Positions 24,972 through 25,016 of a DNA stretch of 64,000 nucleotides are shown piece after piece (within the stretch, counting starts at the first letter, position 1; every line of letters starts with the position of its first letter). A model generated the notes under the pieces. It saw only the letters and a list, made by a program, of their open reading frames with translations, was not told the DNA's origin and made no database searches. This DNA is from Macrostomum lignano (lineage: Eukaryota): the NCBI GenBank assembly GCA_002269645.1, contig NIVC01000386.1, forward strand, positions 62,001-126,000. Direction: 5' to 3'. Made by a program: the position numbers and the translations under genes.

Positions 24972-25016
24972 GCTTAAGACCGCGGTTTCACCCTTATTGG
25001 GGCTCATCAGTTAAGC
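24972..25016 (-). ncRNA. Type I minimal hammerhead ribozyme (Penelope pLTR / retrozyme type)
   Basis: Minus strand GCUUAA-CUGAUGA-GCCC-caauaa-GGGU-GAA-ACCGCGGU-C-UUAAGC: 6-bp stem I, complete core, 4-bp stem II, palindromic stem III, GUC cleavage triplet. Confidence 0.88.

What the first reader, a model, noticed from the sequence alone, without database searches (positions are those of the whole stretch)
24972..25016. Textbook minimal hammerhead ribozyme on the minus strand with a palindromic stem III
Seen: GCUUAA/UUAAGC stem I, CUGAUGA and GAAA core, GCCC/GGGU stem II, and ACCGCGGU palindrome before the GUC site (predicted cut between 24978 and 24977). Established: minimal type I hammerheads with palindromic stem III occur in Penelope pLTRs and metazoan retrozymes and are thought to cleave as dimers. 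No intact ORF lies next to it, so it marks a non-autonomous or relic element.
Basis: partly seen in the sequence, partly recalled or inferred. Interest (0 to 1): 0.7.

Follow-up and report, generated by a model that had tools for sequence, protein, structure and literature searches.

The report
Solo hammerhead ribozyme in flatworm retroelement
The motif is a real, complete self-cleaving hammerhead RNA of the common animal type, present as a single copy inside a short non-coding mobile-element remnant in the flatworm Macrostomum lignano; it is a new example of a well-known kind, not a new kind.

Summary
A complete type I hammerhead lies on the minus strand. The core is at 25016..24972 and the full motif, with a distal helix I, at 25030..24964. 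The predicted cut is between 24978 and 24977. It is not chance: 0.005-0.015 descriptor hits are expected per window. A covariance model built from 80 independent metagenomic hammerheads finds it alone (56.3 bits, rough E about 5e-18). Rfam gives only a sub-threshold HH9 match (36.7 bits against 52).

The label "minimal" is wrong. The motif has the canonical metazoan architecture: 6-bp helix I, a UAC bulge, a distal helix, 4-bp helix II and a CAAUAA loop. Only helix III is tiny, and it is palindromic (ACCGCGGU).

The true Penelope-type minimal hammerhead is elsewhere in the window, at 41826-41862 (+), behind a truncated Penelope-like (PLE) ORF.

The host is Macrostomum lignano. The hammerhead is solo, has no RT nearby, and is followed on the same strand by the window's only (CCCTAA)n blocks. 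An 11-bp direct repeat brackets a 632-nt unit.

Most likely it is a dead-end monomer of a PLE-dependent non-autonomous element (retrozyme or pLTR type). This is a new member of a known kind, of modest interest. Cleavage and copy number in the genome were not tested.

The parts
24964..25030 (-). Complete type I hammerhead, including the distal part of helix I: AGGUGU (25030-25025) pairs with ACACCU (24969-24964). The internal loop is GAUUCUAC (25024-25017) opposite UG (24971-24970).
   Evidence: Sequence; Rfam HH9 alignment over model positions 1-77; R1 hit at 25028..24962, 56.3 bits
24972..25016 (-). Helix I is GCUUAA (25016-25011) with UUAAGC (24977-24972). CUGAUGA is 25010-25004. Helix II is GCCC (25003-25000) with GGGU (24993-24990), with loop CAAUAA. 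GAAA is 24989-24986.
24979..24986 (-). Helix III segment ACCGCGGU. It gives only 2 bp (A-U, C-G) plus a CGCG loop in a monomer, but is an 8-nt palindrome able to form an 8-bp helix between two copies.
   Evidence: Duplex energy -14.1 kcal/mol and an intermolecular helix in the cofold. Palindromy is conserved in relatives.
24977..24978 (-). Predicted self-cleavage site: after C17 (24978), before U1.1 (24977).
   Evidence: Position of GUC relative to the core; rule from established hammerhead knowledge
24603..24659 (-). First block of degenerate (CCCTAA)n on the hammerhead's sense strand, about 295 nt downstream of the hammerhead.
   Evidence: TRF rows 24613-24656
24448..24492 (-). Second (CCCTAA)n block. 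It ends the GC-richer, C-rich unit and abuts the downstream copy of the direct repeat.
   Evidence: TRF row 24448-24480
25079..25089 (-). Upstream copy of the 11-nt direct repeat GAATCTGTGAC (candidate target-site duplication).
24436..24446 (-). Downstream copy of GAATCTGTGAC, starting directly after the last telomeric block.
24447..25078 (-). Candidate 632-nt non-coding element between the two direct-repeat copies (GC 51%, against 38-39% in the flanks). The upstream boundary is uncertain: the compositional block runs on to about 25300.
   Evidence: No ORF or RT similarity. No unusual overall fold (z -1.0).

Best explanation
The site is a single, structurally complete, canonical metazoan type I hammerhead ribozyme in the genome of the flatworm Macrostomum lignano. 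It lies in a short non-coding retroelement remnant. That remnant is a monomer copy of the hammerhead-bearing non-autonomous elements (non-LTR retrozymes, or pLTR derivatives) that depend on Penelope-like elements (PLEs) for mobilisation.

Inferred mechanism: when the minus strand is transcribed by read-through, helices I (6 bp plus a distal helix), II (4 bp) and III form around the CUGAUGA/GAAA core. The UAC bulge of helix I docks on loop 2. The RNA then cuts itself after C17 (between 24978 and 24977), leaving a 2',3'-cyclic phosphate and a 5'-OH.

Helix III has only 2 bp in a monomer, and the predicted lowest-energy monomer fold sequesters part of the core. Fast cleavage is therefore predicted to need two copies pairing through the ACCGCGGU palindrome. 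With only one copy at this locus, no unit-length or circular RNA can be released, so the locus is probably a dead end.

The C-strand telomeric repeats at the 3' end of the unit are read as the element's own tail, of the type used by telomere-attaching PLEs. The 11-bp direct repeat is read as a target-site duplication from endonuclease-mediated insertion.

Shown: the motif, its significance, its family resemblance, the covariation in that family, its solo status, and the neighbouring features. Inferred: transcription, cleavage, the need for a dimer, the mode of insertion, and the role of the tail.
For: - Motif and core are intact. Chance expectation is 0.005-0.015 per window.
- The independent model R1 gives 56.3 bits at this one site, within the range of true members (50-87 bits).
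- The family structure is supported by covariation. All 6 helix I pairs, all 4 distal pairs and 2 of 4 helix II pairs have changes on both sides. 87.8% of cells are paired, against 71% in shuffles and 27-38% when the partners are slid.
- The architecture matches the published definition of canonical metazoan hammerheads (PMC4209133).
- The host is M. lignano: a window ORF is 100% identical to a UniRef M. lignano GPCR.
- It is solo and non-coding: no second copy, no repeat of its flanks, and no RT similarity nearby.
- PLEs are present in the same window: an RT-thumb plus GIY-YIG fragment with its own min-HHR. Published work says retrozymes co-occur with PLEs and derive from their pLTRs, and that dispersed monomers are common (preprint 10.64898/2026.07.22.740005; PMC7761336).
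- The only telomeric arrays in the 64 kb lie 300-530 nt downstream, with the C strand on the hammerhead's sense strand.
- The same strand relation holds in all metagenomic loci that carry both features (L028/L112, L074, L077, L087, L099). L074 has hammerhead, then CCCTAA, then PLE RT ORFs, all on one strand.
- An 11-nt direct repeat abuts the last telomeric block, and GC steps from 51% to 38% there.
- Dimer prediction: the active monomer fold is -12.6 against an MFE of -18.9 kcal/mol; the cofold is -45.1 against 2 x -18.9 and contains the intermolecular palindrome helix. 74 of 96 relatives have a palindromic helix III, in 6 sequence types.
Against: - No other M. lignano copy could be examined, so family membership within this genome, the true boundaries and the target-site duplication are unverified.
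- An 11-mer shared between the two flanks is not rare in itself. 0.31 are expected across the regions compared, and a second unrelated one was found.
- The compositional block extends about 200 nt beyond the upstream repeat copy, which conflicts with the 632-nt boundary.
- The telomeric repeats are about 295 nt from the hammerhead, not immediately downstream as described for Athena and Terminon elements (PMC6431247).
- The unit has no rod-like fold (z -1.0). It is not tandem. Its GC (51%) is slightly above the '<50%' reported for retrozymes (PMC7229834).
- The flanks show no similarity to the window's PLE 3' region or to any fetched locus beyond the ribozyme core.
- The 10.1-11.1 pair is G-U, which may reduce activity.
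- Published assays report that most invertebrate type I hammerheads cleave efficiently as monomers (PMC7761336), so the dimer requirement may not hold.
Confidence: 0.6

Rival explanations
1. The locus is the 3' end of a 5'-truncated endonuclease-deficient PLE (Athena, Coprina or Terminon type). It was added onto a G-rich telomeric overhang or a healed chromosome break and was later internalised. The (TTAGGG)n on the + strand is then the priming site plus the element's own tail, and the 11-bp repeat is coincidental.
For: - EN-deficient PLEs combine a hammerhead with reverse-complement telomeric repeats downstream of it at their 3' ends (PMC8557442, PMC6431247).
- The strand order here is the one that model predicts: + strand TTAGGG, then the antisense tail, then the antisense hammerhead.
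- The compositional block ends about 25300 without regard to the direct repeat.
- M. lignano has a history of genome duplication and chromosome fusions (PMC5704211).
Against: - No RT remnant lies upstream.
- No telomeric cap is seen at the 5' truncation point.
- The repeats are about 295 nt from the hammerhead rather than immediately downstream.
- The hammerhead is canonical, not the PLE or Terminon minimal type (PMC7229834).
- The direct repeat abuts the telomeric block.
- EN-deficient PLEs could not be looked for in M. lignano with these tools.
Confidence: 0.2
2. The hammerhead remnant and the interstitial telomeric repeats are unrelated neighbours. A solo hammerhead copy merely landed near, or was joined to, a short interstitial telomeric sequence in a genome that is extremely rich in simple repeats.
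For: - The window is saturated with micro- and minisatellites (83 TRF rows).
- The spacing from hammerhead to repeat is about 295 nt, and the metagenomic examples show variable spacing. One (L077) has the repeat upstream.
Against: - These are the only telomeric arrays in the 64 kb, and they lie within about 530 nt of the only canonical hammerhead. The rough chance of that, with the right strand, is about 1%.
- The strand relation is the same in every metagenomic locus that has both features.
- In L087 the repeats lie inside a 1329-nt unit whose ends overlap identically. In L074 they lie between the hammerhead and the PLE ORF.
Confidence: 0.12
3. It is a host-domesticated hammerhead that regulates a transcript, like the intronic HH9 and HH10 ribozymes of amniotes.
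For: The best Rfam match is Hammerhead_HH9, over the full model length.
Against: - The score is 36.7 against a gathering score of 52.
- The resemblance is the general canonical type I architecture, shared with more than 120 metagenomic copies.
- No gene was detected on the minus strand around it.
- It lies about 2.5 kb beyond the end of the + strand ankyrin/Mab-21 ORFs.
- Conservation in other species could not be tested.
Confidence: 0.05
4. It is a chance match to the short hammerhead consensus, with no biological meaning.
For: The core is only 11 fixed nucleotides, and Rfam's curated thresholds are not reached.
Against: - 0.005-0.015 hits are expected per window under descriptors looser than the observed motif.
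- An independent covariance model gives 56.3 bits at this one site.
- Non-core features also match: the UAC bulge, the distal helix, loop 2 CAAUAA, and the palindromic helix III.
Confidence: 0.01

Closest known systems
Canonical metazoan type I hammerheads of non-LTR retrozymes (corals, mussels, amphibians; Cervera & de la Pena 2014 and 2020)
   Same: - 6-bp helix I, 4-bp helix II, a UAC bulge and an A-rich loop 2.
- A 2-bp helix III capped by a 4-nt palindrome.
- A non-coding context, co-occurrence with PLEs, and the common occurrence of dispersed monomers.
- A model built from such hammerheads scores the site at 56.3 bits.
   Different: - It is not in a tandem array, so no unit-length or circular RNA can be made from this locus.
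- The internal loop of helix I is larger (8 nt opposite 2 nt).
- The helix III palindrome is CGCG rather than the common AGCU.
- Pair 10.1-11.1 is G-U.
- The unit (632 nt or more) is larger than the usual 150-450 nt and carries CCCTAA blocks.
PLE minimal hammerheads (min-HHR) in Penelope-like element pLTRs
   Same: Type I topology, a palindromic helix III region, predicted dimer action, and association with retroelements.
   Different: - The min-HHR has a long helix II with a bulged base, a short helix I and no real helix III. The 25-kb motif does not fit this.
- The window's real min-HHR is at 41826-41862 (+), behind the PLE ORF. It is conserved, with compensatory changes, in L121.
3' ends of endonuclease-deficient PLEs (Athena, Coprina, Terminons)
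   Same: [quoted passage not shown]
   Different: - The repeats are about 295 nt away, not immediately downstream.
- There is no RT.
- No terminal chromosomal position is evident.
- A flanking direct repeat is present.
- The hammerhead is canonical rather than minimal.
Sm-alpha / Sj-alpha SINE-like elements of schistosomes (same phylum)
   Same: A short non-coding retroposon in a flatworm that carries a canonical type I hammerhead with a UAC-type bulge and an A-rich loop 2. The loop comparison is from my memory of the Schistosoma ribozyme.
   Different: - Sm-alpha is tRNA-derived (PMC2770079). No tRNA-like region was found here.
Rfam Hammerhead_HH9 (RF02275), the intronic ribozyme of amniotes
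   Same: The best-matching curated model, aligned over its full length including the distal helix I.
   Different: The score is 36.7 bits, below the gathering score of 52. The host is a different phylum, and there is no evidence of an intronic or conserved context.

Membership tests
Hammerhead ribozyme, type I | Conserved core CUGANGA ... GAAA ... with an A15.1-U16.1 pair and a non-G residue at position 17 | tested here: met
   CUGAUGA 25010-25004, GAAA 24989-24986, U16.1 24979, C17 24978
Hammerhead ribozyme, type I | Three helices around the core, with helix I open (5' and 3' ends in helix I) | tested here: met
   Helix I 6 bp plus a 6-bp distal helix; helix II 4 bp (one G-U); helix III 2 bp
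Hammerhead ribozyme, type I | Reaches the curated Rfam gathering score of a hammerhead family | tested here: not met
   No hit at gathering thresholds. Best match is HH9 at 36.7 bits against 52.
Hammerhead ribozyme, type I | Self-cleavage at the predicted site | not testable with these tools
   Needs in vitro transcription, or end-mapping in M. lignano RNA
Canonical metazoan type I hammerhead (retrozyme type) | Helix I of 6 bp and helix II of 4 bp with conserved loop nucleotides; helix III of 1-2 bp with a 2-4 nt palindromic loop (PMC4209133) | tested here: met
   R1, built from 80 such sequences, gives 56.3 bits. The UAC bulge and CAAUAA loop align with the family consensus.
Non-LTR retrozyme | Head-to-tail tandem repeats of about 150-450 bp, each with one hammerhead | tested here: not met
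   One hammerhead of this type in 64 kb and no repeat of its flanks. Fits only the 'monomer derivative' category of preprint 10.64898/2026.07.22.740005.
Non-LTR retrozyme | Non-coding unit flanked by target-site duplications longer than 4 bp | tested here: inconclusive
   No ORF or RT. An 11-bp direct repeat is present, but 0.31 such matches are expected across the regions compared and the compositional boundary disagrees.
Non-LTR retrozyme | [quoted passage not shown] | tested here: inconclusive
   Expression is not testable here. The predicted fold of the 632-nt unit is not unusual (z -1.0).
PLE min-HHR in a pLTR | Long helix II (about 6-8 bp) with a bulged 5' base, helix I of 4-5 bp, no helix III; located in the repeat flanking a PLE ORF | tested here: not met
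   Helix II is 4 bp without a bulge, helix I is 6 bp, and a helix III is present. There is no PLE ORF within reach. The motif at 41826-41862 largely fits instead: bulged base, short (3-bp) helix I, no helix III and a position behind a PLE ORF, though its helix II is only 4 bp.
EN-deficient PLE (Athena/Coprina/Terminon) 3' end | [quoted passage not shown] | tested here: inconclusive
   The strand and order are right, but the gap is about 295 nt.
EN-deficient PLE (Athena/Coprina/Terminon) 3' end | A PLE RT ORF lacking GIY-YIG upstream of the hammerhead | tested here: not met
   tblastn with 36 PLE proteins plus the L074 ORFs finds only 40717-41625 in the window.
EN-deficient PLE (Athena/Coprina/Terminon) 3' end | Subtelomeric location, with 5' truncations capped by telomeric repeats | not testable with these tools
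   The chromosomal position of the window is unknown. No cap was seen upstream of the hammerhead.
Sm-alpha-like SINE | A tRNA-derived 5' region with a pol III promoter | tested here: not met
   ARAGORN finds nothing in 23000-30500.
Rfam Hammerhead_HH9 | Score at or above the gathering threshold, and a conserved amniote intronic locus | tested here: not met
   36.7 bits, below 52. The host is a flatworm.

The most novel reading that the evidence does not exclude
The C-strand telomeric repeats are a functional 3' tail of a dispersed, canonical-hammerhead-bearing non-autonomous element. On this reading, the telomere-pairing and priming device known from endonuclease-deficient PLEs (Athena, Coprina, Terminons) is also used by retrozyme-like elements inside chromosomes of a flatworm and of several other, unidentified eukaryotes (L028/L112, L074, L087, L099). 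This would supply the priming motif that non-LTR retrozymes are reported to lack. It would also link them mechanistically to the telomerase-related PLE reverse transcriptases.
Probability: 0.2. Interest if true: 0.6.

Novelty: new member of a known kind. Interest (0 to 1): 0.35.

Why it matters
Type I hammerheads occur by the thousands in many animal genomes, so one more copy is not surprising. Four points give it modest value.

1. No paper in the searched library reports hammerheads in Macrostomum lignano, a regeneration and stem-cell model.

2. One 64-kb window holds both hammerhead classes: a canonical type in a non-coding remnant and a minimal type behind a PLE ORF. This fits the current view that retrozymes are non-autonomous partners or derivatives of PLEs.

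3. Both are invisible to Rfam at curated thresholds, so standard annotation would miss them.

4. The recurrent, strand-consistent pairing of a canonical hammerhead with C-strand telomeric repeats deserves a genome-wide check. If real, it bears on how these elements are primed.

Tried and rejected
- The Rfam default scan of the window gave no hit; only the permissive scan showed HH9.
- An exact look-up of the window's GPCR ORF found nothing on record, so no M. lignano contigs could be fetched. Copy number, empty sites and consensus boundaries therefore stayed untestable.
- A protein search with the 84-aa ORF between the hammerhead and the telomeric blocks found no homologue. This says nothing about copy number.
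- Reading six-frame translations of 25034-30033 and running tblastn with PLE proteins showed no RT remnant near the hammerhead.
- Self-comparison of 23600-25900, and of 24661-25300 against the whole window, showed no second copy or tandem structure.
- BLAST against 120 metagenomic loci showed similarity only in the ribozyme core and the telomeric repeats, so no homologous element was recovered.
- Folding the 632-nt unit gave no rod-like or unusually stable structure.
- The tRNA scan for a Sm-alpha-like pol III head was negative.
- The bacterial promoter and terminator scan is irrelevant for a eukaryote and was disregarded.
- C-to-U decay at a CpG as the origin of U11.1 was considered. The window's CpG o/e is 0.6. 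It is left as speculation, because 7 of 80 relatives share the G-U pair and methylation in this species was not checked.
- Several papers were not held.

Full report
**1. Observation**

On the minus strand, 25016..24972 reads GCUUAA-CUGAUGA-GCCC-CAAUAA-GGGU-GAAA-CCGCGG-U-C-UUAAGC. All invariant hammerhead core positions are present.

Two details were not noted. Pair 10.1-11.1 is G-U rather than G-C. The motif also continues outward: an internal loop (GAUUCUAC opposite UG) is followed by a 6-bp distal helix, AGGUGU 25030-25025 with ACACCU 24969-24964.

**2. Significance**

- A permissive type I descriptor finds this site only, against 0.015 expected per window in 200 Markov simulations.
- A descriptor that requires a palindromic helix III finds two sites, against 0.005 expected.
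- Rfam at curated thresholds finds nothing. With permissive thresholds the only credible match in the window is Hammerhead_HH9: full-length, 36.7 bits, E 1.2e-5, gathering score 52.

**3. Relatives and structure**

One metagenome scan used a pattern that fixed only the core and the loop 2 letters. They share with the window a UAC bulge 5' of a 6-bp helix I, a 4-bp helix II, loop CAANAA, and a very short helix III with a 4-nt palindrome.

Eighty distinct sequences were aligned (A1). On the hammerhead structure:
- 87.8% of cells pair, against 71% in shuffles and 27-38% when the partners are slid.
- All six helix I pairs and all four distal pairs show changes on both sides.

A covariance model built from this alignment (R1) did not include the window. 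It hits the window once, at 25028..24962 (-), with 56.3 bits and a rough E of about 5e-18. That is within the range of other members.

By the published definitions (PMC4209133) this is the canonical metazoan type I hammerhead, not the PLE 'min-HHR'.

**4. Monomer or dimer**

- The catalytically competent monomer fold is 6.3 kcal/mol above the predicted minimum. In the minimum-energy fold, CUG of the core pairs with the helix III region.
- Two copies are predicted to gain 7.3 kcal/mol and to form the intermolecular 8-bp ACCGCGGU helix. The duplex alone is -14.1 kcal/mol.
- Among 96 distinct relatives, 74 have a perfectly self-complementary helix III segment, in six different sequences. The window adds a seventh. 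Palindromy has no use in a 2-bp hairpin, so this is covariation in favour of a dimeric helix III, as proposed in the literature (PMC4209133).
- Against a strict requirement: most invertebrate type I hammerheads are reported to cleave efficiently as monomers (PMC7761336), and a coral retrozyme hammerhead cleaved at about 0.8 per min (PMC7229834). Whether that coral ribozyme has the helix III geometry seen here was not checked.
- These are predictions only; nothing was assayed.

**5. Host and context**

A window ORF (7272-8597) is 100% identical to a UniRef GPCR of Macrostomum lignano. The window is packed with micro- and minisatellites.

The hammerhead is solo:
- Its flanks are unique in the window.
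- No ORF of note lies beside it.
- tblastn with PLE proteins finds no RT remnant there.
- No tRNA-like head is present.

On the hammerhead's sense strand, two degenerate (CCCTAA)n blocks follow, at 24659-24603 and 24492-24448. They are the only telomeric arrays in the 64 kb.

Directly after the second block comes GAATCTGTGAC (24446-24436). The same 11-mer lies upstream of the hammerhead at 25089-25079. Together they bracket a 632-nt unit with 51% GC, between flanks of 38-39%.

Two cautions apply. First, 0.31 such 11-mers are expected across the regions compared, although only about 0.002 at that particular boundary. Second, the GC-rich, C-skewed block runs on to about 25300, so the upstream boundary is uncertain.

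**6. The telomeric repeats are probably part of the element**

Among the 120 loci, all that carry both a hammerhead and telomeric repeats have the C strand on the hammerhead's sense strand: L028/L112, L074, L077, L087 and L099. In most of them the repeats lie 200-530 nt downstream.

- In L074 the order on one strand is hammerhead, CCCTAA, then PLE RT ORFs.
- L087 is a 1397-nt contig with identical 68-nt ends. This implies a 1329-nt tandem or circular unit that contains both features.

Endonuclease-deficient PLEs are known to combine a hammerhead with reverse-complement telomeric repeats at their 3' ends (PMC8557442, PMC6431247). There, however, the repeats lie immediately downstream of the hammerhead, and the hammerheads are of the minimal type.

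**7. PLEs in the same window**

- ORF 40717-41682 (+) is a 5'-truncated RT-thumb plus CX4CxxC linker plus GIY-YIG fragment. It is 70% identical to a metagenomic RT protein.
- It sits between two (TCTA)n arrays. This fits the microsatellite insertion bias reported for PLEs (PMC8557442).
- 144 nt after its stop codon lies a minimal hammerhead, 41826-41862: ACC-CUGACGA-A-GACC-CUGUUUA-GGUC-GAAA-AU-UC|GGU. Rfam does not detect it.
- The homologous metagenomic PLE (L121) has the same motif at the same place, with compensatory changes: helix II GACC/GGUC becomes GGCC/GGCC, and palindrome AAUU becomes AUAU.

The genome therefore has the autonomous partner that the literature proposes for retrozyme mobilisation (PMC7761336; preprint 10.64898/2026.07.22.740005). 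Its ribozyme is clearly different from the one at 25 kb.

**8. Interpretation**

Best reading (0.6): a dead-end monomer of a PLE-dependent, non-coding, hammerhead-bearing element with its own C-strand telomeric tail.

Rivals:
- the end of an EN-deficient PLE added to an old chromosome end or break (0.2);
- unrelated neighbours (0.12);
- a domesticated host ribozyme like HH9 (0.05);
- chance (0.01).

What the ribozyme does for such elements is unsettled even for PLEs. In one PLE, hammerhead mutants did not affect insertion in vitro (PMC11167929).

**9. Novelty**

This is a new member of a known kind. No paper in the searched library mentions hammerheads in M. lignano. The strand-consistent link between hammerheads and telomeric repeats is the only part that might lead further.

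Noticed in passing
window 40717-41682 (+) and 41826-41862 (+); L121 1860-1910: A 5'-truncated Penelope-like element ORF (RT thumb, CX4CxxC linker, GIY-YIG). A PLE-type minimal hammerhead follows 144 nt after its stop codon, with the predicted cut after C41859. The homologous metagenomic PLE (70% aa identity) has the same motif with compensatory changes in helix II and in the helix III palindrome. Rfam misses it.
   Followed up: yes
window 39625-40649 and 42098-43553; L121 1950-2194: The PLE fragment lies between two long (TCTA)n arrays. The related PLE in L121 is followed by a (CTCTGT)n-like array. This fits the reported PLE insertion bias for microsatellites.
   Followed up: partly
L074 246-2505; L087 whole; L028/L112: Metagenomic loci pair a canonical type I hammerhead with C-strand telomeric repeats on the same strand. 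L074 continues into PLE RT ORFs. L087 has identical 68-nt ends, implying a 1329-nt tandem or circular unit. L112 has short internal repeats interleaved with CCCTAA blocks. The source organisms are unknown.
   Followed up: partly
A1 / L001-L120: 74 of 96 distinct metagenomic hammerheads have a perfectly self-complementary helix III segment, in six sequence types. About 90% of contigs carry only one hammerhead. A few carry two to three copies, either in tandem (about 300-1000 nt apart) or inverted.
   Followed up: yes
window 17824-22486 (+): Roughly 2.6 kb of ankyrin repeats (33-aa period) in two adjoining ORFs that are not in the same reading frame. They are followed by ORFs with a weak Mab-21 C-terminal domain match (E 1.4e-4, below the cut-off). 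This may be one ankyrin-Mab-21 gene.
   Followed up: no
window 7272-8597 (+): An apparently intronless rhodopsin-family GPCR ORF of 441 aa. It is 100% identical over 74% of its length to a 391-aa UniRef M. lignano protein, so the deposited model is shorter than the ORF. The nearest named relatives are cholecystokinin- or neuropeptide-receptor-like proteins of lophotrochozoans.
   Followed up: partly
window 28408-28628 and 29797-29996 (+): Two copies (89-94% identical) of a repeat whose start contains GGTTCGATTCTC, a tRNA B-box-like motif. This suggests a tRNA-derived SINE. The copies flank a 19-nt minisatellite. ARAGORN calls no tRNA there.
   Followed up: no
whole window: Tandem repeats are exceptionally dense (83 TRF rows, many arrays of 0.3-1.5 kb with periods of 4-140 nt). 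GC and strand-skew steps are sharp. CpG o/e is 0.6 against GpC 1.08.
   Followed up: no
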